DNA of 64,000 bases from Bugula neritina (Eukaryota > Animalia > Bryozoa), in NCBI GenBank assembly GCA_964035545.1, contig OZ037766.1, positions 6,438,722 through 6,502,721 of the forward strand, read 5' to 3'. Below the pieces are notes generated by a model. The model did not search any database. It was not told the origin of the DNA and saw only the letters and a program-made list of their open reading frames with translations. Below are positions 245 to 64,000 of the stretch, piece after piece (positions within the stretch are counted from its first letter, which is position 1; the number at the start of each line of letters is the position of its first letter). The translations under genes and the position numbers were made by a program.

Positions 245-373
245 AATGCCAATGGAAAAATCAGCTACAGAATTATAGGCTCCACACCGCTACAAGGTAC
301 AGACCATTTCTACATGATACCAGATACAGGGGAGATAATCACTAGAAGTAGTTTAACATCAAACATCTCACAG
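245..373 (+). CDS. First visible cadherin exon (internal)
   Basis: TTTTTAG|AAT GCC...TCA CAG|GT; reads NANGKISYRIIGSTPLQGTDHFYMIPDTGEIITRSSLTSNISQ; joins in phase 0 to YVLSLEATDNGKPPL at 679. Confidence 0.8.
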
Positions 374-9300: not shown

Positions 9301-12300
9301 GAAAATTGTTTTTTATTATTGTAGATTCCAGCTGTTGTCACTGTGAATGTGGTGAGAAATCTGCACTCACCTGTGTTTGAGACTGTGTCTTATGACAAAT
9401 CTATTGGAAGTCTACTCGCTGTCAACAGCGTTATTGTCACACTTCGGGCTATCGATAATGATGTTGATCACTTTGGTATTGTTAAGGTATATAAAGTTAC
9501 TTTTGCTAGCTTTTGCACACAGTATAAAAGTGGTATAAAACTTATAATATTACCCACACAATCTATAACGCTCATTTCGTAAAGATTTTTTTAATTTATC
9601 GTATTTGTATTTTGAAAATATTACTTCCTGCATAAGTATAGGCAAGTAGGTTTTATGATTGTTTTAATCACATCATAAAGGAAACTTACACACCATTACT
9701 TTTAGCAGTTAAAGTTTTATGAGATTAAAATTACGGTTTATTTTTTTTTGTTATATGAAAACTGATTTTGTTCTATAGTATGAGTTGCTAGGAACTACAA
9801 ATGCTCTGGAATACTTCTCTGTGAACACCGAGAATGGAGAGATAACTCTGACAAAGTCCCTGGCTAATACTACATCCTCGACGTTCACACTAGTGGCAAG
9901 AGCTTATGACATGGGACAACCTGCTAAATATGATGTCATCACATTTACTTTCACTATGGAAGAGAACCTGTTCTCACCTGTCATAAGTCCACTCACATAT
10001 ACAGCCACCATTTATGAGACACATGATATAGGTACTTGCTACTGTACTTGTGGTGTGACTAATTTGGTAAATGAATTTTTTAAAACATTTACACTGTAAG
10101 GCTCTCAATATTTTTATGGGTAAAAACACGAGTATATGACGTATATTAGTGATTGCTGATGTCAGGAAGAGCATTTAATTCTAATAGTTTCTGTGCCTAT
10201 AACAAAAGTCCTCAAACCTTGTTTTCAGCATGGTGAGAGGTGTAGTCCTTAGCTTGCCTAACTTCTGGTCATCAGAAGTTTTCACAGAGATGAAGACTTT
10301 ACACATACATGAGTTTTTTTCTAGCTATGACTTGATTTCTTGTGAATCAGCTACTAGGAGAGTTCAAGTTCTACTCACTGAGAAGTCAATGATGTCCCAG
10401 ATAGAGCAGACAATTTCCCAATGTCAAATGTATTGCATATAATTACAGGAATACCTATAATACAAATAAGTGCAACGGACTCTGATAGTAAGGCTCCATA
10501 CAATAGGCTGACATACCATATCACTACTAGCTCTGCTCCTGGGATATTCACCATCAACAGCGACGGTCAGCTTAGTCTGCTGCAAGAAATATCAAACAGG
10601 TGAGTCGTAAGAACCACATTGTTGTCTTTCAATCACTTTTGATACTCATTTCAAGAGAGCAGCTCAATTAATCACCAAAACTATTATTCTTTCCTAAAAA
10701 TCTTGATTCAGCAATTTCTATATAACACGTTTATGTTTTATGCTAATAAATGCTATACTGCCATTAATGTCCATAATGCATGCAACATTCTTGTTTATGC
10801 TTATTGGCCAATATTTCCCATCTTGCAGCTCTCCAGATGAGTTCACTGTGAGGATAGTGGCGAGAGATCAGGGTCCCGTACCACGGGAATCTCAAGAGGC
10901 AACCGTCACGGTCTCAGTTACGAAGAACCGTTATGCTCCAGTGGCTCGTATTGAACCTTCCACAATTACTATCGGTAAGCAGTCTACAAAGTCAAAACAA
11001 CTTTTAGTAAAAGATATAATGATAACCTGTATTAAAGTCTCACGAGTTTTGTCAATTGTTCTCACTTGTTACTCAGTTTATGTTTATATTTTTAGTCTTG
11101 ACATAACATATATGTGAGTAGCTTATTTGAAATTGACAAATTTAAAGTTACTTAAGTTTGCTGTAAATTGTATTCCTTTATCAAGTTCAAATTTTATCAA
11201 AATTTAAATGCTTATGCGTGATATAGACATATCATGTACATCATACATGTTATCACAACTATTAACATCCAAGACTGTAGATTGTGTTTACACTGTATTT
11301 TGCAAAACCAATTATCAAATATATTTTACTATTAGATACTGGAGGTACGTAAACCCTGAAACATTTTTTCCTATTTCTGAATAGTTTTAATCAACCCTGA
11401 CCAAAATTATCTTTAAATAGTTAGTTTTCCTTTCATTTCTTTAACTAGAATACTAATTTTGTTTTATTCTTGCTGTAATGCATGATGACTATTTTGATTT
11501 AATTAAAGTTGATGATAGATGCTGTTTTCTTCTGCGTTAACAATTTAATTATGGCAAAACTCTCAAGTGGGACACAAAGCATAGAGCTGTGTCATAGCAA
11601 TATTTTGTAAACGAACTATTTACCTCAGACTATCTTCTCTATGCATGATTTCGCTTACTTATTCAACCTTTTTTCCAACTAAAATTAGGAAAACTTTAGC
11701 TACATTAATGAGCTCACACTAGGCTCTAGGGCCTAGGCTGTATTGTAAGGATCATATATGTATACATACTAATAAATCTACAGTTTGAAACTGCACATCT
11801 ACAAAGAATTGCCTGTTATAGATGGGAGTGTTACTGTTGGAAGTACAATAGCAAGAGTAGTCGCCACCGACAATGATCTCCCACCGTTCAACAGAATCCA
11901 GTACAGCCTGACAGGAGAGGATAGTGCCCCGGTGTTCTTTGATGTCGACTTCAATGGAAACATATTTGTGAAGAGTGCATTGTCAGCTGACACAAGCACT
12001 GAGTACAACCTGCGCCTAGTTGTCAGTGATTCTGGCAGACCACCCAAATCTTCAGTTGTCTCCGCTACAGTCCAGCTGACTAAAAATAGGTAATCAGTAG
12101 TGCAGTGTCCCTGATACTGAATTTATAATTAAAAGTTGTGTTCCCCCTCCCCCCCTTCCCCGAAGGTACATAATTATTTTAACCTTATTATATAAAGCAT
12201 TCTCATCAAAAGTTCGAAGTTTGATGCTACAAAAATCAGTAAGTACTGCAATTAGCATGAGGGTTTCTAATGCCCACATGGTAATAACATATTCAAGTTT

Positions 12301-20682: not shown

Positions 20683-20717
<35 letters not shown>

Positions 20718-26700: not shown

Positions 26701-29700
26701 CGGTAGTATTCACTTGTGTTGCAACTGATCGCGATACTCAACCTCCGTTCAACACTCTAACATATGAGATGGTGATGTTAGATAACACAGCCGGCCTGTA
26801 TTTTGATGTCAGATCTAATGGGGATATAGTTCTCACCAACTCCATATTACACGACAATCTTGACAAGTACCAGGTATTGTATTACATTGTTACTAATATT
26901 ATTAGGTACTGCTTCATCTCGTGTGAACTTGGAAATCTAACCCTCATGGAATAAGCACTTGTAATCATAAACAGTTATTGTATTCTTTTGGGCTAGAAGG
27001 TTTTGTGTTGAGCCCTGCCGTGATATTGAGAAAGATTTTTTTACCAGAAAGAGAGTTAGTTTTAGTTGCTATACAGTTCAATAGTTGAAACATGAGGAAT
27101 ACAGGAAATTAACAGTTATGCAAATAATAAAGAAAATTATACAATGAGAAATAAGAACATTGATTATTGTAACAAGAAGTTATCTACTCTTGATACTTAG
27201 ACACGATAAGACAATTACTAGTATGAGTGTTTTTAACAGAATTGGTAATTATATAAATAGTATGTATATTGTCATTAGAGTGGAAGATTGCGTTCTATCA
27301 GTATTTTCTAATAATATAAATAGTTACAGCTGAAGCATACCGTAAATTACACACTTATTTTCATTCCATTGGCTGCAACAAATCACATGTGACAATACCT
27401 GCAATCTGCATATAAATAGCCTACTTTGTTCTTGTAGGTCCAGTGTTTGGTTCGAGACGGGGGTGAGCCCTCCCTCACTCACACAACTAATGTTTATATT
27501 AGCGTTAGAAGAAACATCCAGGCTCCAGTGTTTGTGCAGAATGTCTCAGCTACCATATCTGTTTGTGAAGAGAGGTCATTGGGAGATCTCTTTGCCTATG
27601 TGACTGCCACAGACGCAGATGCCACTGTAAGTTTTATGTCAAAGTTTCTTATCAATACCACAGCTACAAGATTACTTTTCAATAAAATTTTATTTTTCGC
27701 AAATTAATGTTGATCAAAGTGCTTTTTTCCCAAATTATCACTTCAAATTCTACACAGCCAACAGATTTATGTGTGACTACCAAACCTACATGTTTTATAA
27801 CTTTGTATTATTACACGAGCCAAAATTTCACAATGTGGTTTTGGCTAAAAAACTAGAAACTAGAAATTTAATGAGTTTTATCAACTCTGTTGAAGAGAGC
27901 CACAGAGCTGTGAAGTTTAAATATTACTTGCAATGAACATGGATGCAAACAACTGAAATAATACAACAACAGCCTCAAGCTGTTATTGTATTTTGCAGCT
28001 ATTCTGTTATTGTATGTAGTGCTCCTTCTGTATAATACATAGACTGTGTGTATTGTCTCCCTTGTACACAGACACATGTATAAGTTGACCTATATATAGG
28101 CACCATGGAACACTCTAACGTACCAACTACTGGGTGACACAGCTGCTAAGCAGTACTTTGACATAGACTCTCACTCTGGAGGATTGTATGTAAAGAGAGA
28201 TCTACGCACAACTTATGAAACAGAATTTACAGCTGAGATCCAAGCAACAGATGGGGGTGGACGTACAACCAACCCTAATATTTACGTAAAACTGTCTGTG
28301 AGCCACAACAGCTATTCACCTGAGTTCTCTACTATTTCTTGTGACAGAACGGTGGGGGCTACAGGTGTCGGTACCGTAGTCACTGTTCAAGCAACTGACC
28401 TAGACCAAGGTTAGAATTACAGCAATAAATTTGTTTCATGTTTCAACCAATGCTTGAATTTTTATTTTAGTGCAAATATGGTATTACCCAAGTATCAACA
28501 AGCCAGTAGTCACCTACACTTTAACTTGTCATTATTTTGCATTTTGTGTTCAAATTTAAATTAATTTTGTCGTTTCACTGATGCAGCATATCAAAAATGA
28601 AAACTTACCATTGGATGCACTCTGAGTATGGAGTGCCAAATGGTCAAAAATTCCATACTCTGAGTGCATATCTAGAACTGCTCTACTTTACATTTTATGA
28701 AATATTCTCAACACTATAAGTTGATGTATGAGAGCTAGCTATTCTGGAAATGCATCATTTGCCACTGTATACGAATATTCAATCTATGGGTATCAAGGCA
28801 TGAGCTGAACGTTCTCATTTTTGTTGGCCTTCATATCTTCTAATCAGACATCTACTTTGTAGGCTGCAATCACTCTGTGATAAGCTACTCTATTGTGGGA
28901 GACCAGGCATCTCTGCAAGCGTTTGGTATCAACCCCAGGAGCGGTGCAGTGTTCAGGAAGCCCGGGATCACCCAGTTGAACATAGACCTGTTTAACTTGA
29001 GGTAACTTACTAGCAACCAATACTATTAATAGATAGCATCAATATTTTTGATCTCTACTATTGGTCAATATCATTAGTCTAGTTAGTTGTCTTGTGTCTT
29101 ATCAGGCTGTGATATGTTGTACGTGTTTGTAAATAGCTCAAATTCTTTATCTTAGGTTTTGTAATTTTGCCTATGTTTAAAATAGTGGTATGAGAATAAT
29201 AATTATAAGATGTATTATACGTAGCATTATTTGTAATATATTCCTTAAATAAACTTTACACTGCTTCATACTGTTACAATGTTAATTAGAAGGTTTATTG
29301 TTTAAATATCTGCAGTTTCTCTGTGAAGTATTATTAAATAGTTGAATCAGAGCTATTTTATTCTAAACTTGAAATTCTCTTGTTGCGTCTAAAGAGTAAG
29401 AGCTCAAGATAATGGACAGCCACCTAGATCTATAGAGAAAGTTTGTGTAATAAAGTTGGAGGGGCTAACCTACGTCCCCATAGTTATCTCACCAGGACCT
29501 TATAGTGGGGTAGTGAATGAAACAGATCCTATTGAGTATCGAACCGATCTACAGATTCCCCGAACACCAACAGGTAGAATATGTTGACATGCATGAGTGA
29601 ATTCATTTATTTATTTTCATGCAATAATATAAAAAATGCACAAACTACAATAAAATATACAAAAGATTGTCTTTCATGTTGCTGCTTCAATGATCGTCAG

Positions 29701-35700: not shown

Positions 35701-37075
35701 TGATTCATATATATTAGCCCTGACTGAAGGTTTTATTGAGTTGGTAAAATGAAGAGTGAGTTTTGACCATCTTATATCTTACGTATGAAAATATTAGTAA
35801 AGTGTTTTGAAAATAAATTGATTTAGGTTATAATTAATATATTATGTGCATGTGCGTGTGTGCGTACATGCGGTGCGTGTGTGTGTGTGTGAGTTTGTGC
35901 ACGTGCGTGCATGCATCTATGTGTGCGTCTATGTGTATATAGAATGAGTATTGAGCGTATATATTTAATAAACTGCATGCTTCACGTTTTCCAGGTACTA
36001 CCTGGAGAGTGGTGGAGTGGCTGCAGAGACGTTCTATGTAGATGACAGAGATGGCCGTGTCATACTGAGAAGAAGAGTACAAGCTGGAGAAACATATCGC
36101 CTCGTGATCAGAGCTCAAGATGGCGGGGAGGTGCAGCTCAATGATACAACATACGTCACTGTGAATGTGATAGCAAGTCAGGGTGATCTTGTCTTTGGTA
36201 AGATTTTATTCTCAATAATTACTTCAGGAAACTCTCTAATCTTAAATGTAAATCCCACAAAAGTAGCCCAATTGTTTATATGCTAATTCTTGAATTTGTA
36301 TGCATATTTTTAACTATGTTAAGCACAAAATAATAATCTGAAAGTTTTCTAATAAGAAATAAACGAAGCAACCAAATATGTGGGTTGCCAAATATGTAAA
36401 CTTTCTAATGCTTAATACAATGTGAAGTTTTGCTCAAAAAATGACCAGCTGTTTTACCAGCCGTGCCATAGAAGACTACCACTTAGATAAATTAAATGCT
36501 TCTGTTTATTCTTTGAAGTTTATTAGAATTTTTTAGAAAAACGTTCTATCATACCATCAGAATTCAGCCAATGTTGACACTAAAATTTTATTCAAATTAA
36601 ATGCAGTTTCGAGTTACTAAATAAGTTATATGTAAAAAATTACTAATAATCTACCCATTAGGTGTGAAAGCCTATTGGTTGGTTGAGCTCTTTACTGATA
36701 AAATTAGTGTAAATACTAAAGTATAGTGTACTGGGTTTTACTTCTTGTTGCAGGTACATATATTGTCAGGGTAGATGAAGACATTGCTGTAAATGAAGTG
36801 ATTGCCACTGTGTCAGCGTATCCTGGCTCTAACATCAAATATGACAAGATTGAAGGCAGCGGCACTGGCTGGACCTACTTTGTTGTGAGTATCACATTTT
36901 AATAACTATTTTATTTTGTCAGAAATAAGTTCTTCAACTCAGGATAATAGCATTACAGCACTATTTGACACATAATCACTTCTACTGCTTAGGATTAGTG
37001 CTTACTTTATGAATTTATATATATGTATACACACCACACACGTGCACGCACACACGCACACACGCACACACGCAC

Positions 37076-37114
<39 letters not shown>

Positions 37115-43100: not shown

Positions 43101-46100
43101 CCAATCTCTACCTGCACTCAATAATTTATCTTTCTGATGGTTTTTTAAAAAATATTGTTTCCACACTCATATGCAATATACTATAAGGTTATTTCTGAAT
43201 CATTGTAGTGACTGTTATAAGAGACCAGTACGCCCCAACCTTCCTTCAGACCAGCTACTCTACCATTGTGTTGGAGAACGTCACCGTACCATCTGTACTT
43301 CCTCTGCCTGACTTCCGAGCTGTAGATTCTGACTTGAATGGAGTGATAGTCTACAGGGTGATAAGCAGGGACTTGTCTTCTGTGTTCTTTGGTTTGAATG
43401 ATGACAACAAGTTGTTTGTGAGAAACAGTCTTACTCAAGCACCTCTTGATCAATATACGGTATGTTTTAAAGTGACATGCTAAATAAAATAGGATAAAAA
43501 CCTCTTATGGGTTTTGTCTAAAGTATTTACTTGACTCATTTGCTACTTTTCCTTCTGGCATATTGTACTAATTATGTCAGACCTAAATTTTTAATCATTA
43601 AAAGTTACTTGCACACATGATAAAACTTTTTAATAAATTGCACCAATTAACCATCAGAGACACTGCATATCGATATTTGCAAAGTGTGAGTGAAAGTTCC
43701 TATCTTTCTTAGTGTTTATTTCTTACTATAAGTTTGTTATGATGTAGCTGAGAGTACAAGCCTATGATTCGTCATACCCTGACAATGTGGTAGAGACTAC
43801 AATAAGAATAGACATTATTAGACTGACTGTCAGTAACTCTACTCTTTCAAAGACTATCAGTGAGAATACTGGTGAGTCAACCATTACAACCGTCTGCTGA
43901 TTAATCTCTTTGCTAGTTAAAAGTTGTCTTCTTAACTATATCAATACTGTCTGCTAATAAAGCTTCTGTTGATTAGGAGTTGTCTTCTTAACTAGTTTAA
44001 TATTATGTTTTTGCTTTTAGTCCGATTCTCTGCAGTGTACCGGCTGTCTGCCGACAACCCCCGCACTCAGCTGACGTACAGTATCTCTCAGTCTGATGAC
44101 GTATTCAATGAGTTCTTCATAGTGGACGGTGCAGACGGCACAATCTATTTGTCTAAATCGCTAGCTGGACACAATGTTACATCCACCTCTTGCGTTATAA
44201 AGGTAGATTGTTTTAACAGACTAAATGTGTTACTACAATATTTTTGTATGAGTTGACAAATATTGGTAACATGCTGCTTGCTAAAGTTTTTCAACAGTTG
44301 AGCTTAAGCCAGAAGTAACCAACATTCTAAGTCTGATAGTGCTACAACAATGCCTTTAGATGTTGCTAAAGTCATTCAGTTTGTTGATATAAATAAATTA
44401 AATAAAGTAATGAGGTTTTAAGATTTTTATGAAAGCTTAATTTTATCAATTTTTGTCTACATGCTACTATTTCTACATGTTAGAAGTATTTGTTGAATTA
44501 GTGTCTAAATTTTACGCTCACAGCTGTGTCGCGTGTTCTAGGCGTGTATAGGAAGTCGGTGCGGCTACCAGTCCTTGACCCTGACTATCATCCCGGGTAG
44601 AAAGCCCTACTTCACTGATACACCTTACAGAACACAGCTGAGTCTCAATCACCCTGCTGGGAGTCACGTATACACTGTGTCAGCGCAGGATGCTGACCTT
44701 CAAGGTCAACTCATCTACAGGTCAGCCTAGTTTGATTTATAACTATTGTGATAACTGCCTAAAATACCTGGAAAGGTATTTTAGGCAGTTATCACAAAAA
44801 ATAACCTCAAAAAATATACAGAGGTTTTGAGAGCACAGTATTATACACAAGAACATGAGTTCATTTCTATTGGCGTAAATTTCAACTGAGTCTGTTATTA
44901 TAACAGGATAGAAACTTGAGCTAATGGGATGGATGTACAAGTTTTGTAAAATGTTAGAAAAAATAATTTTGTGAAACCTTCCTGTCATATTTCTTCGCAT
45001 GAACAAAGTTTGCGCACAGCAGAACGGTTCTGTTAGAATGGCTGCTTTTTCTCATCAGAAGTGTTTCTACAGTTATTAACTCAACCATGTGCTTATTGCA
45101 ATAATGCAAAGTTGGAGTTATCAGGATTTGCTTTTGGTTTTAGAGTTGTTGGCGTTTATCCAGCTCAACTGTTCTTTGCTGTGGAAGGAAGTGGAAAAGT
45201 CACATTAACTAACAGTTTGAGAGAAGCTGTTAGCAGACAGACGGAGTACCAGGTTAGCCAATTAGAATGTCTCTTCAACATTATCTTTCACATCGAGCTT
45301 GGTGTCTATGATTTATATTGAAAATATGTCTTTATGCCCATCTATTTTATTTAGTAATTGCATAGTTGATTGTTCAAAAAATATTTATTTACTAAAATCT
45401 ACCAAACTTGTCGTATACTTTCAGTTGTCATATTTAGATGATTTGAAGACTTTTAAGCACTCAGATTTTTAGGTTCTCAAGCTAATTTTTTGTTTTCCTT
45501 AGGTTGTGATTCAAGTCTATGACTCGTTACTGCCCAGCCAATCAGCTGAGGAGACTCTAGTCGTCTCTGTAGAGAACTCGTCACCCAGACTTGGTGTTTA
45601 CTCTGACAGCATTAGTGTCAGCGAGTACCAGAATCTGGGTATTATATATACAGTCAACGCCACTGATGCAGACGGCGATGAGTTGACGTACACATTCGCA
45701 GACGTAGAGGGCGTGGTCAACAACTTCCTGTGGCTGAATCCGAGTACCGGAGAGATTGTGTTACAGAGATCTCTAACCACCATATCTACTAGCACCTTCT
45801 CAGTAAGAAGCGTTTAGCACCCCCCCCCCCTTTCTATTAGATTATTTTTGTGGAATTAAAGTTAAAGTAAATTAAGCAAATAATTGAATGACAGTTGCCT
45901 AGTGTATGTGTAAGTGTTAAGTACAACTAAATACTCCTTAGTTACTAATGTGTAAGTAGAAAATTTTATTAGGTGTTTATTAGTTTGTTGGAGTAGCTGT
46001 GATGCAAAGACGTGTATATACTACTAGGTGAATATTAGAATATGTGATACACATGTATATATTATTACTAGGTGAATGTTAGAATATGTGATGACAGAAC

Positions 46101-49100
46101 CCCACCTGCCTGCACTGATGAAACATTCAGTTTGACTATCAGAGTAAACAGAACCCTTGTGCCTACCATATTAAACCTCCCTAATAAGGTTACTATTGAT
46201 GATGATCGACAAGTCGGTAAGCAAGATGGTGAAGAGATTGTTTTATTCATTATGGAAACAGCAATTGTTTATGTAATTCTAATGCGTTTGTGTTTTCCTT
46301 CTACTTGATTATTTTTTGCAATTGAAGTGTTTTTAAAACTATTTGGTATAAGTGTATCTGTTTTTCATTAAATAAATTCAAGATAGTTTAATTAAATTCA
46401 AATTATGTCAATAATATATACAACTAAATTAAATTGCACATATTTTTCTCTTTGTTGCAGGTAGTGATGTCTACACAGTAATATCAACAGGTGCAGACCT
46501 ATCTGCTGATATTATCTATAGTACGATAGGCGTCTCACCCGCCCCCACCTACTTTTCTATTGACAATGAAGGGAAGGTTAAAGTGCAGACGTCGCTGATT
46601 CAAGACAAGACAGTTAATTATCAAGTGAGTATTGAGACACTTGTTCATACTACTTGTTGCCATCTTAGCATGACGTCTTGGTCATTAGTTAGTGCGAGAT
46701 GGGGGTGATGTGATAGAAGCAGATGGTAAAGTGTTGGGTTGGAACCTCATTATAAAGCAAATAGAAGTTTACTTTTGATTTAATAAAAGCATTGCATAAA
46801 ATAATGGTGCTGTATAGTCTATTAGCCTCTTCTATTTTAAGCACGAATATATAAGCGTATGATTATGATTATTGCTTTTAATTCATGCATGCAGGTGGAG
46901 GCGAATCTAATAAAAAAGTCTCTCTATTCTTTACATTAAAGCACATTTGCGTGGTTCTATACATTATTCTGTTTGATAGTTGGTTGTGAGTGCAGCGTAC
47001 CGACAAACTCCTCTAAAGTCCAGCACAGGAACTCTGACTATCAGTGTGATACGTAACGAGTTCTGTCCGCAGTTCAACAGCGCTGTCCAGGTCACCATCT
47101 CGGAGACGATCGCTGTCGGGACGACTGTTATTAGAATGAATGCGACAGACGCTGACGGAGATGATGTCATCTATTCTCTGGTCAATCAGGATGCACAGAC
47201 TCGAAATCTTTTCTTTATTGAACCTCACACCGGTGAAGTTATCACTCGCAATCTGCTATCGGTAAGTTTTAGGGTATAAACAAGTATGGGTGGCACTTTT
47301 TCATAGTTTGATTGAGTGGAAAGAATAAAATTTTAATATCTTGTGCATTTTGATTGTGCATTCAATATGATGAGGTAATATATGAGTGAAGTAATAATAT
47401 GTGTAACTGTATTGCATAAGAAGACAATGCAATATGTGAAAAGTTTACAATGAAATATAACAAGGATAGATGACTTCAATTCTGTTTCTTTCTCTGGACT
47501 AAAATAGTAGCATATATACTGTATAACCTATTATTATAATTGCTTGTATACTCAACCTAATGTGTTACATTACTAACTACAAGTAAACTCAAAGCTGTTA
47601 GTCAGGATAATAATTAGTAGGATTTTAGTCTAACATAAGCAACCAATAGCAATTCCATTTTATATGTTTTCTACTTTGTAAAATAACTGCTGCAGTCTTT
47701 TATTGCTAGATAACCCGATGCATTACTTTATTTTAATTTTCTGCAAGAAACTGGTTAAAAGATGAGTATTAAAAGTATTTTCAAAAAACTAAACTGTATG
47801 CATTCAACTAATTCACTCTTGAATCTCATTGCATAGTATGAATTTTCAGCTATTTTATGATGTGCTGTTTTGCAGCAAACTCCAACTGGACAGCAGTTTG
47901 CTTCGTACACACTGACTGTTGAAGCCAGCGATCAGCAGACGCCACGAGCCTGTAGAACTCAAGAACAAGTGACTATTGTTGTGTTGAGGGACAGGTTGTT
48001 GCCCACCCTGCAATATTCTAATGCGTAAGTTTTTATAACTACTAGTTTTTATGAAAAAATAAGTAGGAACATTAATAAATTGACATTATTATTACAGAAT
48101 TGTAAATTCTCATGAACTGTATATTGCCAGTGCATTTGATAGCAATACATCGATTAATAAAAATAAGCAGTTACTGTACAATATATTATAACAATATAAT
48201 AATTTAAAGTGTTTTCATAAGCCATATTTCACTTTACTGAATAGTTGTTAGTTTTTAAATACTTCGGATAAGCTTTCACTCTACTGTAACTTTGCTATAC
48301 TCTGTTGTAGAACTATTAGAGCTACCCATGCTGTAAACACAACTGTTGTGGAGCTGGTAGCTTCAGATGATGACCTTGAAGGTGACTTGACCTTTGAACT
48401 GTTGGGAAGTTACCCGGCCACTGAATATTTCTATATACAGGAAGTTGGTAATGCGGAAGGGAAGACTCAAAGAGTGTCTATTAGATTGAAGAAACAATTA
48501 GCTGCAGACCCGCTAGAAAGCCTAATATACTTGGTAATACATGCTTATTAGTAATATTGACTCTGTAGTAGAAATATCTGTAGGCATTGGTTAAAAACGC
48601 TAGTGTGATCTTTTAATCTTGTTTTGTTTTAGCTGCGGGTGGCTGTGTTTGACTCCCTGTATCCTACACACAGAGTCGTGGCAGACCTCTTCATTACTGT
48701 AATTAGAAACCCCAACCAGCCAATATTTCAGCAGAATCCATACCGAGCTACTATCAAAGACACTCTGCCATCTGGTGGGATTTTTATGCGTTTAAACTGA
48801 ACTTGAATACAATATTGTCATTTATATTCGTTAAAGTAGCTACTTGCTAATAAAACATTCACTTATAAGTTAGAAAAACACTATAATAACATCATACAAA
48901 TGATTTTGTGCCTTAAAAATATGATATTGGTGATGAATAACATATTTTCCTATCAATTCAGTTGATATATAAAATAGTTATTTAGTTTAGCGTTGCAAAA
49001 TAGCCTTTGCTATGGTGTTATGGTAGCTTTTAGATGTATTTATATCTAGCAGACTAATATATGATAACTGATTATAGCAGAATTATGTGTAAAACAGTCA

Positions 49101-52100
49101 CCAAACATAGAGATTCAACTTTGTATTTTTACTTGAAATAACAGGTGGGTTAGTAGTAAAGGTAGAAGCTACTGATGAAGATGCAGGGGACACAATTACC
49201 TATGAAGTGGTCGGCTCTTCTGGAGACGGTACAGATCTGTTCCTTGTTATACCTTCTACTGGAGAAGTGAGGTTAAAGAAGCCAGCTACTGATTCGACTA
49301 GTAGCCTGTATAACGTAAGGCTTTTTCCTATTAGTCTTCTATGCTACTATCTATTGCTTTAGTGAAATCTTTTCTTTAGTAATGGCTGTAGTTGTTCAAA
49401 ATTTTGAGTAAGCAACTCCCTATGCAACCCTTTCACTTAAATGAGTTTTCTTTTAACAAATGTATTGTGGAAAAGCTTTTCTATGCCTACTTCATAGTTG
49501 CAGATATTTCCAGGCTCGTATATTATCAAAATAGAAACTTGTGTATACACATCATAATTATTTTAGCTTACAATAATTATTAGTTTATACCTAGTTGTGA
49601 CAAACTGGGTAAATATCACTTTTTATAGTACTATTATATTACATAACAGTCTAACATGGTATACAGTCATTATATAACAATTTCACACAATAATATATTA
49701 TATAATAACTTTAGGTGGTGTTGAAAGCATCAGACAATGATGGTAGATATGATACGGCAACTCTCATAGTAACTATTAGAAGAGACGAGCTCCCTCCGTA
49801 CTTCATTGGTCTGCCTTATGTATTCCCATTTGATGACAACAGGCTACCTGGTGACATACTGTTCACTGGAATCATAGCTCGTGATCCCGATGGCTCTGTA
49901 AGTTAGCCCAGTTCTCTGCTGATATTTTTGGACAGCGTGTTTACCCTATTTTAAAATGTGCAAATTTCTTGTAAAAAATACTGCTTTTTAGTTGTAGGCT
50001 TCATTATTGGTGGTTTAGAAAATACTTGATATGGAGAACTTTGAAAATGTTAATTTTGCACTTGCTAAATTCAAGCTGTAAAATACTAATTTTTCTATCC
50101 CATTAAGTTGCTGTTGATGAAAAAAGTGAAACAAGATTTAGGGCTAAGACACAAACCTTACTTACAATGATTTTCACAAGTTTTTAGCAGTTATCACACA
50201 TCTATATTCTGGTAGTCGTGACAGGAAATAGCCATTTATTTGACTCGTTATAGGGACGTCTGCAGTACACAGTGGAAGGAGACTATCAGGCTCGCTACTA
50301 CTTCAACGTTTCCAGCAGAGGTTTTGTGCAGCTGAGGAATTCGGTTAAGTTTGATGCTTTGATCCCGGATCAATACAACATCAACGTGTGTGCCTATTCT
50401 GCAGATTTCCCCTCTAACACTAATTGCACTGTGGTAAGCAATTACTACTAGAACTCTGGTGAACTACTCTGTAGCATAACAAGTGATTCGTGGTGTTAAT
50501 TTAGCACACTGCTAACTATTATATATTATAAATCAATTACTTCTATGTCTATTTATAAAGGTCATAGCCAATGTCAGAAGAAATCCAAATGCTCCAGAAT
50601 TTTCCAAACCTCAATACTCGCGTACCCTGCCTTCTTCCTATGAGCTTTACACAGATATTAGGCTAGGAGTTTCAGCCAGTGACCTAGACAAAGTGAGTAA
50701 TATTTTCACATTTTTACATTCATGTACATTATTTCATCTTAAAACTAATTTGTTTTTATGAAGGCTTCAGTTTAGTTCTAGATCTGTAAAATCAGCCTAA
50801 CCAGTGTCCAAGTGTTTTGCAAACAATCTTAAATTTCAGTTTATAACTAGAGTTTTTTTTGGTAGCTTTTGGGATATGAAAATTATTGCAAATTAAATTT
50901 TCAAGTTTTAGTCTAAGGTTTTGTTAGAAAAATGTCGTTTGTTTTGCCTTATCTATTGCTTGAAATTACCTGCAATGTACAGCTGTTATATTATTGTATT
51001 ATATTACATATTATGGTTCCTAAACTTTCTGCTTCCTATAGGATGAGTTGCAGTACTACATTCAAGATGACCAGTTTGGAAAAGTGGCCTCCAAATTCTT
51101 CCACATGGACTCTGATACGGGTGTTGTTTCACTTCGCCGACCTCTAAACAGAACCGACCCTGAGTTCCCTGCTAACTCCATCTTCTCATTCAGAATAGTG
51201 GTTAGAGATCAGGTACCAACCAATCAGAAGTCTGGAGAAGCCTCAGTTTCCATAACAGTTGTGGAGGGGGGCGATGCGGCTCCCCGATTCAACCTTGGTG
51301 TGTATTCTGTTGACATCAATGAAAACTACGGAGTTGGTGCAGTGGTGGTGAACACTAGAGCAGTGGATCCTGACAACGACGGACAGGTAGGGTGAATCAT
51401 AAGCATGCAGCATAGCATTATATTCCTCACCAACTAGTAGAATATTCTGAGCAAAGTTTTGCATGCTTTTGCCACTTGAAATAATGTGAGGCAGAGAAGT
51501 TTGAACGGGTCATCATCAAACTTTCTAAAATTTTATACATTTCAATTATTTTAATGAATAATTGGATAAATGATTTATCTAATAATATTTTTGTCTATAG
51601 CATGTTATTTGTTGCATCAACACAGAATCTATGTTTCAATAAGATTGTGACTCTTACATACCATTAACACGGCTGCACATGTTATACCTCATCTCATTGG
51701 CAGGTTATGTATTCTCTCGCGTCCACAAGCAGTGGCCTTCAACTCTTTGATATTAATAATATCACGGGAACTGTATTCGTGAGCAGCAGTTTAAAAGGAC
51801 CCAACATGTTTGCACAAGAATACAGGTTCGTATAAGTTGTTGACATATTTATTGCATGGGATTGACACACAAGTATTATTCTAAAGCCTAAAACTTTACT
51901 CGATTACTTAAAATACTTTCTAAAACCAATGTTGGTTGTGTTTTGCTAATAGACAAAAGTTTCAGAAATAATTTTTTAGTCAATTTGATATCTATTGGCA
52001 TATAAACAAAGAGTATAAAGGTTCATTCAACAATAAAACAGTGTCAGTTATTGTTTCATACTTGTATTGTTATGTCATCAAAATTCATCCAGCATTTTAT

Positions 52101-55100
52101 ATCAATTCATACAATATTATTGTAACTTGGGATTGTGTTTCCTTACAGATTTAGCATCAAAGCATACAACATACTGAATCCTTCTAAAATTGGACTCGCT
52201 ACTGTAGCAGTTAATGTAGACCGTAACATCAACTCACCAGTGTTTACTGGTGACTATACGACACAGGTCAATGAAAATATTCCTCTTGGCACGAGAATCA
52301 TACAAGTGCAGGCATCTGATGATGACGGGGTTTGTCTATGAAGTTATATAAATAATCATGTATCAAAAATATGTTGACACTATTGAGTTAACAATGTCTA
52401 TGCAACTGTATTGTATGAAATGTGTTTTCTATGATTGTTTTATATCGCATATTAGAAACCCATAAGCTCTGATTTTTCAATTATTCAAGTTTTAAACAGT
52501 TAATTAAACAAAGATAGGCCTACTACATTATTTATAAATTAGCTCATTTATGAATAATAACCTTGAATGTGGCTTAAAAGTATGTTTATAGTTGCAGTCA
52601 AAAAGTATTTAGATTTTTAGAGCTAACTGCGTAACATGTAGAAAATTTTTAATATCTATATAAAGCATTTAAGTACTATTATAGTATTTAGTTGTTAAAT
52701 TTATAAGTATTTCATGTAAACAAGTGTTGTGTAAATGTTTATCAGGATGAGCTGATATACTATCTCGATGGACCTGGAAATATAGAACAATGTTTTTTCA
52801 TTGTACCAACTACTGGAGTTATCCACTCTACATCTCTATTGTCCGGCTCCAACCCTGCTTGTTCAGCCAACACCTATCAGGTTTATTTTAAACCTAATTT
52901 TTGTACAATTTACTCAGTTGAAATGTTGTGAAAGCTTTTGATTTTTTTTTGCAAATTTTTGTATTGCTTATGAGTTTTAATTCTGTAGTTTAATTGAAAT
53001 TTGATAAAGTTTCATTTAGAATTTATTTTTCAGGGTATATTTTAGAGTTTATTGCATGCTAAAATGGTGTATATTTAGAGTTTATTGGATGATAGAATAA
53101 TGTGAATTTTAGAGTATATTGCATGCTAGAATGGTTTATATTTTATAATTTATTGCATGCTAAAATGGTGTCTACTTTTAATTTTATTGCATGCTAAAAA
53201 CCATTATATATTTGCATCTACAGATCAGAGTAAAAGCCCGAGACCAGAGAATACCAGAGAAAGTTGGTGTGGACTATGTAAGCTTGTTTGTGGCTAGAGA
53301 TAGGTCGACCCCCTACTTTGTTGGTGAACCTTACAGCGTGATCATCAACTACACTATCCCTGTATCCACTCCTGTATACACTGTACAGGCTATTGATAAC
53401 AACCTCAGCGTAAGTTTTGCCTCACCCTGTCTGTCTGTTAATAAGGAGCAGTAGTGGAGAGATTGAGATAGCCTAAGTTCCTTAAGTTTTTTTATAAATT
53501 TTGGTTTGGGGCGTGGATTGAAATTCTTGTGAGAAAATAACTTCTTTTGCTACTTTTCTAATCTATAACGCAGGCTTTTCTCAATTTCTTCATTGCTGTC
53601 TCCATTTTGTCTGTTACATGGGAGAAGGTTGTGAACATTGTATAATTTAGTAAATGTTTACCATTTTAAACTAAGTTCTAAGTCGATGAAACTTTCAGAT
53701 TTTCAGATTATAAATTTAGCAATTAAAATTTAATGCTAATTTACTTTAGTTTTCGATTTATTGAGAATGTTTAACCAATGGATGTCATGGCGTTTGTAGG
53801 GTAGTCTAGTTTATCAGCTTGTGGGAGATTTCTCTGCACCAAATTTCTTCTCCATAAACGAGACGTCTGGAGTGATATCTGTGAGAAACAATCTTGACCT
53901 CGGAGTTTCTACAACTTACAACCTCCGAGTTCAAGTACGCCATTTAAATATATATGTCTACAATACACTTTATTCAAGTTAGACTTATGCTCTCTTTATC
54001 TAATTATTAATCTTTAAAAATAAAAGTGATAACCCTTTCTTCCTTCCAGTATATTAGCCAATCATCTGCTTACAGGTGTACGACTCTGGAGCGCCAGGGA
54101 TTATCAACACCACGTATGTTCAAGTGATTGTCAATCGCAACCCAACGTGTCCTAAGGTCTCCGTATCACAACAGCCTTTAGAATGGGAGGAGATAACTCC
54201 AGTTGGTAGTGTGCTACTCACTGTACAAGCTACAGATACAGAAGATGTGAGTGTAGCCTGTAGCTCTGAGTCTTTATGCAGTTACTAGATGTATCTCTAT
54301 AAACCAACTTGAGTTAAATATTTGTTTCTTCATATTCTGAGATCCAAAAATATTTGTGTGAGAATTTTAATTTTTCCTTCTGTTATAATTCACAGTATTG
54401 AAACTCATTTACTGTTGCTCCATTAATTTCATCCGTTACACAGCCTATCATTTTCATTTATTGCATTGTAAGCATTAGTTTGCTAAGCTCTGCGTTTACC
54501 CATTTATATGAGGGGATACAATTTTGCAGCAACATGTGACATATATGCTAAGAAATCCATCAGAATATTTCTTCATTAATCCAACTTCTGGAGACTTGAT
54601 ATTAGTAAAGCCACTTACAGCTGACCCTCAGCGTCGCAGTGAATATACTGTAAGTACAGCACTGTTTATATCTGATGTGCAATCAGGTTGTTACTGTAGT
54701 TTTTTTTATCTAGTGTTGTGATTACTCAGTAGTCCCTGTGGTGTAATGGTTGTCACGCCTGCTTGCAAGCTAGAGGTCTCAGATTCAAATGCTATACTTT
54801 ACTGTTTATTTATGTTAAGATATTTATTTTTAAACCTATTTTAGTATAAGAAATTATTGGGAAACTAAATTTGCTCTTCTTTGATCACTCCTGGATTAAT
54901 ATACATGTAGACCTACAAGTTTCCCAATAACAGTGGGGACAACTCTATCATTCTGTTGGTTTTCTGGCGAACTAAATTGCTATAAATAGACATCTATGTT
55001 GAAAATTATAACTTCACTTGCCAGAAACCAATTATGTAGTTTTATATGTGCATGCTGTATATGTCAATACTTCTCTAAAGTCAAAACTAATGTTTATAAA

Positions 55101-58100
55101 CATGGCTTACACTTAGCACTTAGTTGTAAAAGAGAAATTCCATGACTAATACTTATTTTATTTTTGAAAGTACACAGAACATACTTGACATAGCTTTGTT
55201 CTATGAATTTAGCTGAGAGTACTGGTTCGAGACAGTGGCATACCACCCTGTGAAACAGCAGTGTTAGTCAGCCTTAGAGTCTCAAGGAATGTGTATAACA
55301 CAACCTTCCTCAATCTCCCGTCTACATTAACCATCTCTGAAGACACTTCTGGTACAATCTTTAATGTCCGAACTTCTGATCCGGATTTAAAGGTGAGTAG
55401 AATACTGCATTACGCTGTCATCACAAAACATACCCTTATAAACATATAATAGTTGTTGTTATTTGTGTTGCTGTAATTTAAATATTATTTGTTATTTAGT
55501 TTTGAAATATACTTTATTTGCTTAGTAATATATAAGTTATGTAATATTCAGATTAGATGTTGATGTATATTTTTTCACATTACTAATTGCTTTTTCTTCT
55601 ACTTGAACTGCTAGCTACTGAAAACTATAATTTGAGCAACTAGTAACTTTCAAGTTATAGCTTAAGTTTTAAAGTCTGGCACACATTAAGTTTCAGCACA
55701 TCATGAGGCTGTGTGGTGTGTGTTTCGTACATTTGTGTGATTAGAGTTAGTTTTTAGGCTACCTATTCAAAGAAGAATATGATTTGAGAGGACTCCTGTA
55801 GTATTATTAACATAGTTGCCAATTTTTCTTAAAGGTTTTCTTTACAAACCATCCCACTAATATGGAGCTAAACTTGCAAATATTATCACGAGTAACGCGA
55901 CATTGCTTTATTTTCAGGGAGATATTGTGTATGAATTGGTGGGAGATTTTGCAGCGATGCAGTTTTTCCAGATCAACCCCACAAATGGTGCAGTGTCAGT
56001 TAGAAGGTCACTGGTTGAGGATCGTGCTTACGCCCCCTCCTACCAGGTCAGAGTTATAGATTTTAGTACAAGTTTTACCATTTAATATACGTGAGGTCAC
56101 GATTGAATCTACGATAAAACTTAAACAGGTTGTTATATTAACTGAAATTCTGTATGAATTCTTAACAGTTGGTGATCGTAGCCTATGATGATAAGTTCCC
56201 GTATGAGAAGACGGAAGGTGAGCTGACTGTGAATGTGAACAGAAATGATAATCCCCCCATCCCTTCGCAAGTAGTGCAAGTTACTGTGTCTGAGGACTTT
56301 ACATTAGGTGGAGTTATCACGGAATTTAGTGTCACTACCAGCTCCAGCAGGGTAAGATAACTGCCCATTGATCCATTTTAAGTGAACTATTTTGCTATAA
56401 ATTATAAAAATTATTTTATGGTTATAATTCAATGATGTAATAGTAATAATTATTTTGAATATATTCTGGCGTCATTTCTGCCTGTCATACATGTATTATA
56501 GTTTGTCTCATATAAAATTACCTTAATAGCACCGCTACTCCTTAGCTTGTTTTTTATCACTATATTCAGGATGTGAGGTTCCGATTGGTCAATCCTATCA
56601 ATTCTGAGTTTTTCTGGTTGCAAAACTTTGAGAACGGGAAAGCAGCAATACGTCTGCAAAAGAAGCTGTCGATGAGCAATCAAGATCAGCACAATGTATG
56701 TTCATCTGTTGCATTCAAAACTATGTTATTTATGAACATTTGCACACTTCAACTTGTTACATAGTCTAAGTATATAGCTATACCGTGCAAGTTGCGAGCA
56801 TATTTAATGGAATGTTTTGTGTCATTTTTATGTATTAATAAACAGACAAACAGACAGACAGTTGATGCAGTATGTGCTCAGTCAAATTGATAAAAGTTAT
56901 CCTTATTTGAACATCATTTGCATTTATATTTACAGTAAATCACAGTTTATATATGATACATGTTTTAGCTGACTATTGAAGCATATGACAATGGAGTCCC
57001 ACCGCAAACTGCAGAAATATTTGTGATAATCAACGTGATAAAGAACACATACTCTCCAGTATTTATTGGCCTTCCTTATGTTGTCAATATCTCTGAAAAT
57101 ATCAACGCAATATCCGCCATTTTTACAGGTTTGTTCACATATATGCATTTATTGCGCTTACTATTATTTACTATGAATACATTTGACTTAGCTCTTTGGT
57201 CTCGGAGGAAACTTAGTAGCTGTTACTGCTACTTGAATGGTATTTATCTTGTTGACCTTGTAGCTAATATCATGGCATTATTTCATTATGAGTTTAAATA
57301 TTTCAGGTTGTAAAATTTCAAATATATCTCTCAAATGTTAGATTCACAAAACCACTGTGGTTTAGCAAGCAGCTGACTGTGTAATGGCTTCTCTAGCATT
57401 TCACAAACTTTACTGCGCATATTCTAAAGTGTCATCACTTGATAGCTTTGATTTGCACTGCTTAAAATTACCAAGAATTTTCATTGCTTCTGAGGCCACG
57501 ATAAACTGTTGCATTCAGTAATTGAAATGAAGTGCATGAGTAAAAGCATTTTGTGACGTGTGTTTATAGTTACTTCTGTTCCATAAATAAACTTTATCTT
57601 TCAAGTTCAGTTATAGTTTTCAGATTTGTTTCTTCAACAGCACAGAGTACCATTTCTCATGCCTCCACAATGACAAACGAACTTCTGTACAATATAATAT
57701 AGTATTCTGTGAGACATCATGCATCTCCTATATATATGTATGTTACAGGCATCTCAGTGGTGGACGAGGACCTGAGAGGTCAAATTAAATACGAGCTGAC
57801 AGGACATGGCATTGCCCCGACTCTGTTTAGAATAGATGGTGTGTCAGGTGCTCTTTACCTGAGGAACAGGTCCTTACTGAGAGATGATAGCAGTCTTTAT
57901 TATACTGTAGGTTTCTATACATTATAGTCTAGCTGTTGTAGCTGTCTAGCTTACACATTGTTCTTGTAATAATAATACGTATTACTAATATTTATTACTA
58001 ATATGTATTACTAATATTTATTACTAATATGTATTACTAGTCTGTATTACTAATATGTATTACTAATATGTATTACTAGTATGTACTACTAATGTGTATA

Positions 58101-64000: not shown

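What the first reader, a model, noticed from the sequence alone, without database searches (positions are those of the whole stretch)
245..64000. Giant cadherin: ~65-70 tandem EC repeats in this window alone, with neither terminus visible
Seen: about 113 same-strand exons, summed by hand to about 21 kb or 7,100 aa, all cadherin-like. I found no EGF, LamG, TM, signal peptide or stop, and phases are consistent wherever checked. Known: Fat has 34 EC repeats, Dachsous and CDH23 have 27, and each EC is about 4.5 nm long. Inference: the product would be a filament of about 300 nm or more, longer than a hair-cell tip link. It could act as a long-range tether (inter-cilia or microvillar link, cuticle or adhesive matrix). 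Automated pipelines would probably label it 'Fat4-like' or fragment it.
Basis: partly seen in the sequence, partly recalled or inferred. Interest (0 to 1): 0.85.

Follow-up and report, generated by a model that had tools for sequence, protein, structure and literature searches.

The report
Megadalton cadherin gene with atypical linkers
Nearly all of its repeat junctions lack the usual three-calcium motif, so it is probably a long, flexible cell-surface tether rather than a rigid rod.

Summary
On the + strand the window holds 113 phase-consistent GT-AG exons (245 to the window end). They carry 21.6 kb of coding sequence, 7,196 aa and 68-70 cadherin repeats, with no start, stop, TM, EGF or LamG.

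Both termini lie in the flanks. My model has 149 coding exons over 89 kb and encodes 9,428 aa (about 1.03 MDa). It runs: signal peptide, about 8 canonical ECs, about 73 non-canonical ECs, 2 membrane-proximal ECs, a MAD-like domain, TM, and a 209-aa tail.

One spliced 26,255-nt RNA contig from a public run confirmed 10 GT-AG junctions in the 6 kb tested. This supports a single transcript.

No linker in the window has DxNDN. Half carry a conserved Arg-Asn ("RN") that co-occurs with the next repeat's DxD and top-Asp, which suggests single-calcium linkers; this is inference.

Relatives with the same RN repeats and the same C-terminal module occur in molluscs, a brachiopod and a nemertean. They are labelled "protocadherin Fat 4-like", and the Patella models are visibly fragmented.

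It is not Fat, because it has no EGF or LamG. A relative's EC-MAD-TM end folds like PCDH15/CDH23. Function is untested. I rate it a new variant of a known kind.

The parts
245..64000 (+). Central part of one giant cadherin gene: 113 coding exons, 21,588 coding nt, residues about 963-8158 of a 9,428-aa model, 68-70 EC repeats. The gene continues on both sides. Window-relative, the ATG and signal-peptide exon lie at -11849..-11789 (L008:8151-8211) and the stop at 77460 (L018:7460).
   Evidence: HMM hits on the + strand only. Exon chain. Domain tiling.
28100..34177 (+). Eleven consecutive exons whose junctions are seen in spliced RNA contigs: 28409|28863, 29001|29395, 29573|29812, 30054|30437, 30628|31081, 31333|31644, 32127|32430, 32566|32989, 33312|33420, 33559|33905.
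   Evidence: Run X2 record 3 (26,255 nt) and run X1 record 2 (2,587 nt) skip these GT..AG intervals. DNA run X3 shows none of the joints.
11822..12089 (+). Exon carrying almost a whole EC repeat, with ATDNDL, no LDRE-type acidic motif, and a 'LTKNR' linker. It served as the seed of the repeat HMM.
   Evidence: PF00028 E=4.7e-14 over profile positions 10-92 of 93. Sequence read.
31645..32127 (+). Largest exon in the window (161 codons), spanning one and a half EC repeats. It is RNA-confirmed at both ends and single-copy in the genome.
   Evidence: for the junctions; the only match in G000 at E<=1e-6 is itself.
45000..60000 (+). Stretch where EC repeats alternate between two sub-types, 'D.D..xGxLxYxLxGxxPAxxFF' and 'ATDADG---DxLTYxL'. 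This forms a two-EC super-repeat covering units about 46-74.
   Evidence: Alignment. Mean identity at even offsets is 0.28, 0.24, 0.26 and 0.26, against 0.24, 0.21, 0.23 and 0.23 at odd offsets.
63788..64000 (+). Last exon touched by the window (63788-64042). The array continues for 16 more cadherin-coding exons, followed by the MAD-like, TM and tail exons.

Best explanation
Shown. The window is the interior of a single, expressed, multi-exon animal gene at G000:C2, window-relative -11849..77460. The + strand carries 149 coding exons over 89 kb with a 28.3-kb CDS. The product is a type I membrane cadherin of about 9,430 aa and about 1.03 MDa. Its parts run in this order: (1) a signal peptide; (2) a short N-terminal region and about 8 EC repeats with canonical DxNDN linkers, collinear with the N-terminus of a bivalve relative; (3) about 73 divergent EC repeats (24% mean pairwise identity) that all lack DxNDN and the LDRE-type Asp, including every repeat in the window; (4) two membrane-proximal ECs, one behind a canonical DINDNKP linker; (5) an alpha/beta membrane-adjacent domain of about 130 aa; (6) one TM helix; (7) a 209-aa tail with an 'SLxMYVPPE..LGEINFxF' motif shared with relatives in molluscs, a brachiopod and a nemertean. 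Inferred. Half of the stalk linkers carry a conserved Arg-Asn. It co-occurs almost perfectly with DxD and the 'top' Asp of the following repeat, which are the ligands of calcium site 3. These junctions therefore probably bind one Ca2+ instead of three, and the remaining junctions are probably Ca2+-free. This would make a semi-flexible stalk of up to about 0.38 um contour length, taking about 84 ECs at about 4.5 nm each. The canonical, rigid N-terminal ECs would act as the binding tip. The EC-MAD-TM end is the arrangement found in PCDH15 and CDH23, so it may pair the molecule in cis at the membrane as PCDH15's does. The most likely role is a long extracellular tether or link on an apical or protrusion-bearing cell surface. 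Partner, tissue and function are untested.
For: Strand-exclusive repeat hits: 109 on + and 0 on -. One exon chain has no stop and EC domains tile it back to back, with 84 hits, 81 at i-E<1e-3. A spliced 26,255-nt RNA contig matches at 95-96% identity. Ten GT-AG joints were seen in the tested 6 kb and are absent from the DNA run. The retrained model reproduces 10 of 10 of them. The window's + strand has 0 DxNDxxP. The whole protein has only 5, at aa 155, 515, 723, 926 and 8906, all outside the window. Column statistics for the core repeats: XEX Glu 39%, LDRE-type Asp about 3%, DxD 78% and 73%, top Asp 81%, linker R38/N36 of 74. An RN linker predicts ligands in the next repeat: D32 35/36 against 21/32 (p=8e-4), D34 33/36 against 19/31 (p=4e-3), D85 36/36 against 21/33 (p=4e-5). 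The C-terminal exons align collinearly to the relatives' profile: MAD start E=1.5e-4, TM 5e-6, tail motif 3e-6. A fold search with a relative's C-terminus puts only PCDH15 EC-MAD12 and CDH23 EC25-MAD28 on top, at E 7e-14 to 2e-10, with the next cadherin at 5.5e-7. The signal-peptide exon MLFYRLLLLSTLGSFVYAQQ has the right phase. The N-terminal 8 ECs are collinear with Potamilus KAK3608192 residues 138-942. Canonical motif definitions and the bending effect of Ca-free linkers are from PMC5120219. The MAD description and its occurrence next to the TM in PCDH15, CDH23 and PCDH24 are from bioRxiv 10.1101/460097.
Against: RNA support was read directly for only 6 of 89 kb. That the contig spans about -10,050 to about +70,000 is extrapolated from my exon lengths. 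The contig is from a related strain or species, and the run is labelled RNA only by its record. The signal-peptide exon, the exon at 73400-73507, the 3' end of exon 4729-4932 and the last exon with its stop are model choices without RNA evidence. The AF2 model used for the fold search is poor overall (mean pLDDT 51, 64-70 in the MAD part), and it is of a relative, not of this protein. A MAD-only sequence profile found no PDB match. Calcium stoichiometry is inferred from motifs only. No expression site, partner or phenotype is known.
Confidence: 0.72

Rival explanations
1. The array is several tandem cadherin genes, or mutually exclusive transcripts, rather than one gene.
For: Only 6 kb was checked against RNA. 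NCBI models of the Patella relative are split into adjacent genes of 2,190 and 2,892 aa.
Against: One RNA contig of 26,255 nt is nearly as long as the 28.3-kb CDS. No internal stop, signal peptide or credible TM was found. The only hydrophobic stretch came from a read-through exon variant that I rejected. Phases are consistent through 149 exons. In Patella the 'intergenic' gap is itself full of EC-coding ORFs, so the split there looks like an annotation artefact.
Confidence: 0.06
2. It is this lineage's orthologue of cadherin-23, or another Cr-2/tip-link-type cadherin, whose EC number expanded. On that reading it would be an orthologue of a characterised protein.
For: The EC-MAD-TM end matches only the PCDH15 and CDH23 EC-MAD structures at the top of the fold search. 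The gene has no EGF or LamG. The canonical ECs sit at the tip.
Against: It has about 84 ECs against 27. The conserved RN linkers and the tail motif were not seen in any canonical hit among 167 proteins examined. The best sequence relatives are a distinct RN-type group. The genome has other large canonical cadherin loci that could be CDH23, Fat or Dachsous. No phylogeny was done.
Confidence: 0.15
3. It is a Fat/Fat4 orthologue, as the database names of its relatives say.
For: NCBI calls the relatives 'protocadherin Fat 4(-like)' or 'Fat 1-like'. Faint Cadherin_FAT4_N hits are on record.
Against: Pfam finds no EGF or LamG on the exons between the last EC and the TM, nor in the C-terminal 590-690 aa of four relatives. 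The MAD-like domain abuts the TM directly. The tail shows no similarity to the canonical giant cadherins retrieved.
Confidence: 0.03
4. It is a decaying or non-functional repeat array, that is, a pseudogene or an assembly artefact of repeats.
For: Ca-binding motifs are lost in most repeats.
Against: The reading frame stays open through 28.3 kb and 149 exons. Repeats are only 24% identical to each other, 43% at most, so they cannot be collapsed or duplicated assembly copies. The DNA run covers the tested stretch at even depth. The gene is transcribed and spliced. The RN, DxD and Asp pattern is non-random and is shared across phyla.
Confidence: 0.02

Closest known systems
Uncharacterised 'protocadherin Fat 4-like' predictions of Lophotrochozoa: Tubulanus XP_074647699, Patella XP_050391949, XP_055954920 and XP_055954929, Lingula XP_013411494, Haliotis XP_046564129 and XP_046561621, Potamilus KAK3608192
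   Same: They share RN-type linkers with almost no DxNDN (0-1 DxNDxxP against 9-24 RN per protein; Potamilus has 5 against 13). They share the canonical DVNDN EC before the last EC, the MAD-like domain, the 'WW.D' plus TM, and the tail motif QSLxMF.PPDE..LGE[IV]N.F. The N-terminal 8 ECs are collinear with Potamilus.
   Different: Those models have 22-37 EC hits in 1.9-4.1 kaa, against 81-84 EC hits in 9.4 kaa here. Identity is only about 30-45% and there is no collinearity along the stalk. Most of those models start inside an EC without a signal peptide, and the Patella ones are clearly fragments, so their true sizes are unknown.
Cadherin-23 and protocadherin-15 (tip-link cadherins; Cr-2/MAD-bearing cadherins including PCDH24/CDHR2)
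   Same: All have a long all-EC ectodomain with no EGF or LamG. A ferredoxin-like membrane-adjacent domain sits directly before the single TM; the fold search top hits are 6bxz, 6c10, 6eet, 6c14 and 8tri. They mix canonical and non-canonical linkers (PMC5120219).
   Different: They have 27 and 11 ECs against about 84. In CDH23 and PCDH15 most linkers are canonical and Ca-free ones are exceptions; here the canonical ones are the exceptions, 5 of about 84. There is no tail similarity. The C-terminus of the model (..NRKFY) is not an obvious PDZ ligand, though the last exon is uncertain.
Fat / Fat4 and Dachsous
   Same: They are giant atypical cadherins, and some of their linkers lack Ca-binding residues and bend the ectodomain. 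That last point is from my own knowledge of Tsukasaki et al. 2014 and was not re-read here. The Fat4-Dchs1 structure paper is PMC9935876, seen by title and abstract only.
   Different: Fat has EGF and LamG modules and 34 ECs, and Dachsous has 27 ECs. Neither module is present here. The RN motif and the tail motif were not found in the canonical giants retrieved.
Very large canonical cadherins already in databases: Nematostella LOC116612238 (7,723 aa), Sycon ciliatum XP_065195209 (6,691 aa), Salpingoeca urceolata (6,906 aa)
   Same: They have ectodomains of 50 or more tandem ECs and are uncharacterised.
   Different: They keep DxNDN, for example 43 DxNDxxP in the 7,285-aa Nematostella isoform. 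They are shorter, and they give 51-55 EC hits with the same HMM against 81-84 here. That HMM is biased toward this gene's repeats.

Membership tests
Cadherin superfamily | Tandem extracellular cadherin (EC) repeats recognised by PF00028 | tested here: met
   PF00028 hits on 9 of 10 long exons, best 4.7e-14, and on 14 of 48 sampled exons at E<=0.01. PF00028 hits fall within the locus in the genome scan. There are 84 back-to-back hits with the derived HMM.
Cadherin superfamily (canonical Ca2+-dependent linker) | [quoted passage not shown] | tested here: not met
   In the window there are 0 DxNDxxP and 0 LD[RYF]E. Core repeats: XEX Glu 39%, DRE Asp about 3%, linker RN; only DXD (73-78%) and the top Asp (81%) are kept. 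The motifs are met only in 4 N-terminal linkers and 1 membrane-proximal linker, all outside the window.
Fat / Fat-like | EGF-like and laminin-G domains between the EC array and the TM | tested here: not met
   Pfam finds only a weak Cadherin hit on the ten exons from 69,876 to 77,406. It finds only Cadherin in the C-terminal parts of four relatives.
Dachsous | 27 ECs and the conserved Dachsous cytoplasmic regions | not tested
   The EC number differs (about 84). No Dachsous reference tail was compared, and no tree was built.
CDH23 / PCDH15-type (MAD-bearing, TM-adjacent) | Ferredoxin-like membrane-adjacent domain between the last EC and the TM | tested here: inconclusive
   Foldseek on the AF2 model of relative P0025's C-terminus gives only PCDH15 EC-MAD12 and CDH23 EC25-MAD28 as top hits, E 7e-14 to 2e-10. 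The model is low-confidence, and a MAD-only sequence profile finds nothing in the PDB. This gene's own MAD exons align to the relatives' profile only weakly (E=1.5e-4 and 0.037). They could not be folded, because the domain is spliced from three exons.
CDH23 / PCDH15-type | Orthology: 27 or 11 ECs, a tip-link EC1-2 handshake interface, a harmonin-binding tail | not tested
   The EC number differs. Interface residues and tail motifs were not compared, and no phylogeny was done.
Lophotrochozoan RN-type 'Fat4-like' cadherins (unnamed group defined here) | RN linkers replacing DxNDN, a canonical EC plus MAD-like domain plus WW-TM, and the tail motif SLxM[FY].PP[DE]..LGE[IV]N.F | tested here: met
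   Among the 167 proteins held, the tail motif occurs only in RN-type proteins with complete C-termini.

The most novel reading that the evidence does not exclude
This is the largest member so far of an unrecognised, phylum-spanning family of megadalton cadherins. Their stalk is built from a distinct, conserved linker type: Arg-Asn in place of DxNDN, with only calcium site 3 retained. The molecule would be a tether of about 0.4 um with tunable flexibility, a canonical adhesive tip and a PCDH15/CDH23-like membrane anchor. It may be the invertebrate counterpart of protrusion-linking cadherins, at ten times the reach.
Probability: 0.35. Interest if true: 0.78.

Novelty: new variant of a known kind. 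Interest (0 to 1): 0.62.

Why it matters
If the model holds, this is the longest cadherin seen here: 81-84 ECs and 1.03 MDa, against 34 for Fat and 51-55 hits for the largest database entries scored with the same HMM.

More importantly, it shows a regular, conserved alternative to the canonical three-calcium linker. About 37 junctions of one protein carry the RN form, and the same form occurs in molluscs, a brachiopod and a nemertean. This offers a natural test bed for how calcium occupancy sets cadherin stiffness, a question so far studied on single odd linkers of PCDH15, CDH23 and DN-cadherin.

It also flags a systematic annotation problem. These genes are named 'Fat 4-like' and cut into pieces, which hides a whole cadherin subfamily from comparative studies.

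Tried and rejected
1. A search of the 1.84-billion representative library with exon L010:3945-4430 found no close orthologue. The best hits were 33-37% identical, and neither the gene's own product nor the 26-kb RNA contig's product was found.

2. The search for homologous proteins with the C-terminal region of P0025 returned only P0025 itself.

3. A MAD-only profile against PDB sequences found nothing relevant.

4. PDB sequence searches with a canonical exon and an RN exon do not discriminate between cadherin families. CELSR1 ranks first only because it has many ECs.

5. The first version of my exon chainer mis-set one acceptor and missed one exon in the RNA-tested stretch (8 of 10 junctions). 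It was replaced by the retrained version.
   - The retrained version added two 27-nt exons that lie inside tRNA-Glu genes, and a 102-nt read-through at 42655-42756. I removed all three.
   - The chainer's far-upstream exons (-29652..-20715) belong to a PAP2/lipid-phosphate-phosphatase-like neighbour.
   - Its far-downstream exons (83460, 86135, 92731) were dropped in favour of the in-frame stop at 77460.

6. DNA matches of window 12103-12238 to contigs C5 and C3 lie in an intron. They are a dispersed repeat, not paralogues.

7. No paralogue of the tail-motif exon or of the largest exon was found in the genome.

8. Literature searches found no description of an RN-type cadherin or of one with 80 or more ECs.

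9. The search of earlier findings returned nothing for this place.

Joined step left out. The spliced (joined) protein has no reference, so it was never sent to any search, fold or family tool. All such calls were made exon by exon, by reference. The joined model was used only inside my own scripts, for counting repeats and motifs.

Full report
**Source and setting.** The window is G000:C2:6438722-6502721 (+) of a 216-Mb, 35% GC eukaryotic assembly. I fetched 60 kb on each side. The organism is coded. Its nearest protein relatives are lophotrochozoan.

- A repeat HMM iterated from one PF00028-positive exon gave 109 hits in the 184-kb region. All were on the + strand. They ran from window -6218 to +70037, with none beyond and none on the - strand.
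- I wrote a splice-aware exon chainer using codon log-odds, GT-AG weight matrices and phase bookkeeping. It returned one chain.
- After one round of retraining it reproduced 10 of 10 junctions later seen in RNA.
- Two 27-nt exons fell inside intronic tRNA-Glu genes, and one exon variant read 102 nt into an intron. I removed these.
- The final model has 113 exons in the window, the first at 245-373, with 21,588 coding nt and 7,196 aa. By the same HMM, 68-70 EC units are centred in the window.
The window part has no stop, TM, signal peptide, EGF or LamG.
- Pfam's generic model recognises only 14 of 48 sampled exon fragments at E<=0.01. The repeats are divergent and are split by introns.

**One gene or several?** I laid public runs on window 28001-34000.
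- Two runs recorded as RNA-Seq of a 'symbiont metagenome' hold spliced contigs that are 95-96% identical to the window.
- One of these contigs is 26,255 nt long, and its nt 11051-13311 cover this stretch.
- Ten GT..AG joints are skipped in the RNA contigs. None is skipped in the DNA run of organism A.
- Using my exon lengths, the contig would reach from about window -10,050 to about +70,000 (adjusted for the later exon edits). That would be nearly the whole 28.3-kb CDS. This span is an extrapolation, not an observation.
- There is no internal stop, signal peptide or credible TM.
- The repeats are on average 24% identical to one another and at most 43%. They are old, so assembly artefacts are excluded.

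**Termini, all outside the window.**
- *Downstream.* A canonical 'VVDINDNKPYF' linker lies at 71301-71480, followed by a last EC. Then comes an alpha/beta segment of about 130 aa starting 'RMVLVLNKAELSAEEIESYRLLLQKIIG...'. The TM exon is 74735-74859 ('WWPFLLLAALILALALLGIFLLLCC'), followed by a basic 'WRRHYK' exon at 75745-75877. Next is 76485-76630, carrying 'SLCMYVPPEGNNELGEINFAF'. The last exon is 77118-77460, ending at an in-frame stop.
- *Upstream.* About eight ECs have DVNDN linkers at -7029, -5116, -2266 and -837. They are collinear with residues 138-942 of Potamilus KAK3608192.
- Exons at -10111 and -9557 resemble that protein's N-terminal region.
- A 61-nt exon at -11849 encodes 'MLFYRLLLLSTLGSFVYAQQ'. 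It has the correct phase and a good donor, and I take it for the signal peptide.
- Further upstream lies a PAP2-like gene.
- *Totals.* The model has 149 coding exons over 89.3 kb and encodes 9,428 aa (about 1.03 MDa), with 84 EC hits, 81 of them at i-E<1e-3.

- The window has no DxNDxxP and no LD[RYF]E.
- The whole protein has five DxNDxxP, all in the flanks.

Status of each canonical calcium-ligand motif in the 73-74 core repeats:

| Motif | State in core repeats |
|---|---|
| XEX Glu | kept in 39% |
| DRE Asp | kept in about 3% |
| DXD | kept in 78% and 73% |
| Top Asp (XDX-top) | kept in 81% |
| Linker | reads R (38) N (36), typically 'V.V.RN..[AS]P.F' |

- When aligned on the following Pro, the Asn sits where N102 of DXNDN sits, and both Asp positions are lost. 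This alignment is my own reading.
- An RN linker predicts that the next repeat keeps its ligands:
  - first Asp of DXD: 35/36 against 21/32, p=8e-4;
  - second Asp of DXD: 33/36 against 19/31, p=4e-3;
  - top Asp: 36/36 against 21/33, p=4e-5.
- These residues are the site-3 ligands. I therefore infer that about half of the stalk junctions bind one Ca2+ and that the rest are more degenerate. No measurement supports this yet.
- Repeats about 46-74 alternate between two sub-types, forming a two-EC super-repeat.

**Relatives.** The representative-library search with one 162-aa exon gave 5,408 hits but no close orthologue; the top hit was 33% identical.
- Eleven of the top 150 hits share the RN pattern with almost no DxNDN.
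- The named ones come from Haliotis, Patella, Tubulanus, Lingula and Potamilus. All the NCBI-annotated ones are called 'protocadherin Fat 4(-like)' or 'Fat 1-like'.
- Those with complete C-termini share several features with this gene: a canonical DVNDN EC, the post-EC domain, 'WW.D' plus TM, and the tail motif 'QSLxMF.PPDE..LGE[IV]N.F'.
- This gene's exons align to that profile in order.
- None of the relatives has EGF or LamG, and neither does this gene. It is therefore not Fat.
- In Patella, two adjacent 'genes' of 2,190 and 2,892 aa lie in one uninterrupted field of EC-coding ORFs. That field also runs across the annotated gap and at least 7 kb upstream of the annotated start. The public models are fragments, so the family's true sizes are unknown.

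**Membrane-adjacent domain.** An AF2 model of the Tubulanus C-terminus is poor overall: mean pLDDT is 51, rising to 64-70 in the post-EC part, which folds as beta-alpha-beta-beta-alpha.
- Even so, Foldseek ranks only PCDH15 EC10/11-MAD12 and CDH23 EC25-MAD28 entries at the top, at E 7e-14 to 2e-10. The next cadherin scores 5.5e-7.
- A profile of the last EC, post-EC domain, TM and tail also aligns in a single stretch through PCDH15's EC11-MAD12 chains. A MAD-only profile finds nothing.
- A MAD directly before the TM is known for PCDH15 and is predicted for CDH23 and PCDH24. PCDH15's MAD induces parallel dimerisation (10.1101/460097).
- I therefore say the protein works like these cadherins at its membrane end. 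Membership of their orthologous groups was not tested.

**Mechanism proposed.**
- *Shown:* a single-pass membrane protein with about 84 ECs, a canonical tip, a canonical membrane-proximal junction, and a stalk without canonical linkers.
- *Inferred:* the tip binds a partner. The stalk is a semi-flexible spacer with a contour of about 0.38 um, taking 4.5 nm per EC from general knowledge. The MAD may pair molecules in cis. The molecule tethers or links apical surfaces or protrusions to each other or to extracellular material.
- Ca-free linkers bend cadherins (PMC5120219), so a straight 300-400 nm rod is unlikely.

**Limits.**
- RNA was read over 6 kb only, and that RNA is from a related strain or species.
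- Several terminal and small exons are unverified.
- The joined protein was never sent to a search, family or fold tool, because it has no reference. All such calls were made exon by exon, and the joined model was used only in my scripts.

**Verdict.** I rate this a new variant of a known kind, with interest 0.62.

Noticed in passing
window 1227-1297(+), 2175-2246(-), 3692-3763(-), 7417-7498(+), 13370-13443(-), 19486-19559(+), 20294-20365(+), 63227-63298(+): Eight tRNA genes (Gly-GCC, Glu-CTC twice, Leu-AAG, Cys-GCA, Ala-AGC, His-GTG, Gln-CTG) sit inside introns of the cadherin gene, on both strands. The two tRNA-Glu copies fooled my gene finder into calling 27-nt exons.
   Followed up: partly
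window 60781-60954: A 54-nt unit is repeated 3.2 times in tandem at the 3' end of exon 60656-60934. The unit contains a donor-like CAGGTGAGT, so the exon end and its splice donor are triplicated in frame, with 'TDISCQ' repeated in the peptide. Alternative donors are possible.
   Followed up: no
window 4824-4957: A 24-nt tandem repeat (5.5 copies) overlaps the predicted end of exon 4729-4932. The EC unit there lacks its C-terminal third, so the true donor is probably near 4842.
   Followed up: no
L007:5154-5324 and neighbours (window-relative -24848..-20715): The upstream neighbour on the same strand looks like a PAP2/lipid phosphate phosphatase gene ('KLFTATPRPYFISVCQP'). My chainer wrongly fused it to the cadherin.
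   Followed up: no
L016 (Patella vulgata OW026349.2:14514983-14577560): EC-coding ORFs run without a break through the annotated gap between XP_055954920 and XP_055954929, and at least 7 kb upstream of the first annotated start. The public gene models there are fragments of one larger gene.
   Followed up: partly
window 12103-12238; L002 (G000:C5:3267724-3267844), L003 (G000:C3:8906075-8906140): An intronic stretch is 73-81% identical to places on two other contigs. It is probably a dispersed repeat.
   Followed up: no
runs X1 and X2 on window 28100-34000: RNA-Seq runs filed as 'symbiont metagenome' (2016) carry this host transcript at 95-96% identity, with many synonymous-looking differences. 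The sampled animal was a related strain or sibling species of the sequenced one.
   Followed up: no
window 32258-32417 and 32650-32907: Tandem repeats with 27-nt and 11/33-nt units lie in two consecutive introns. The DNA run shows extra depth and broken contigs there.
   Followed up: no
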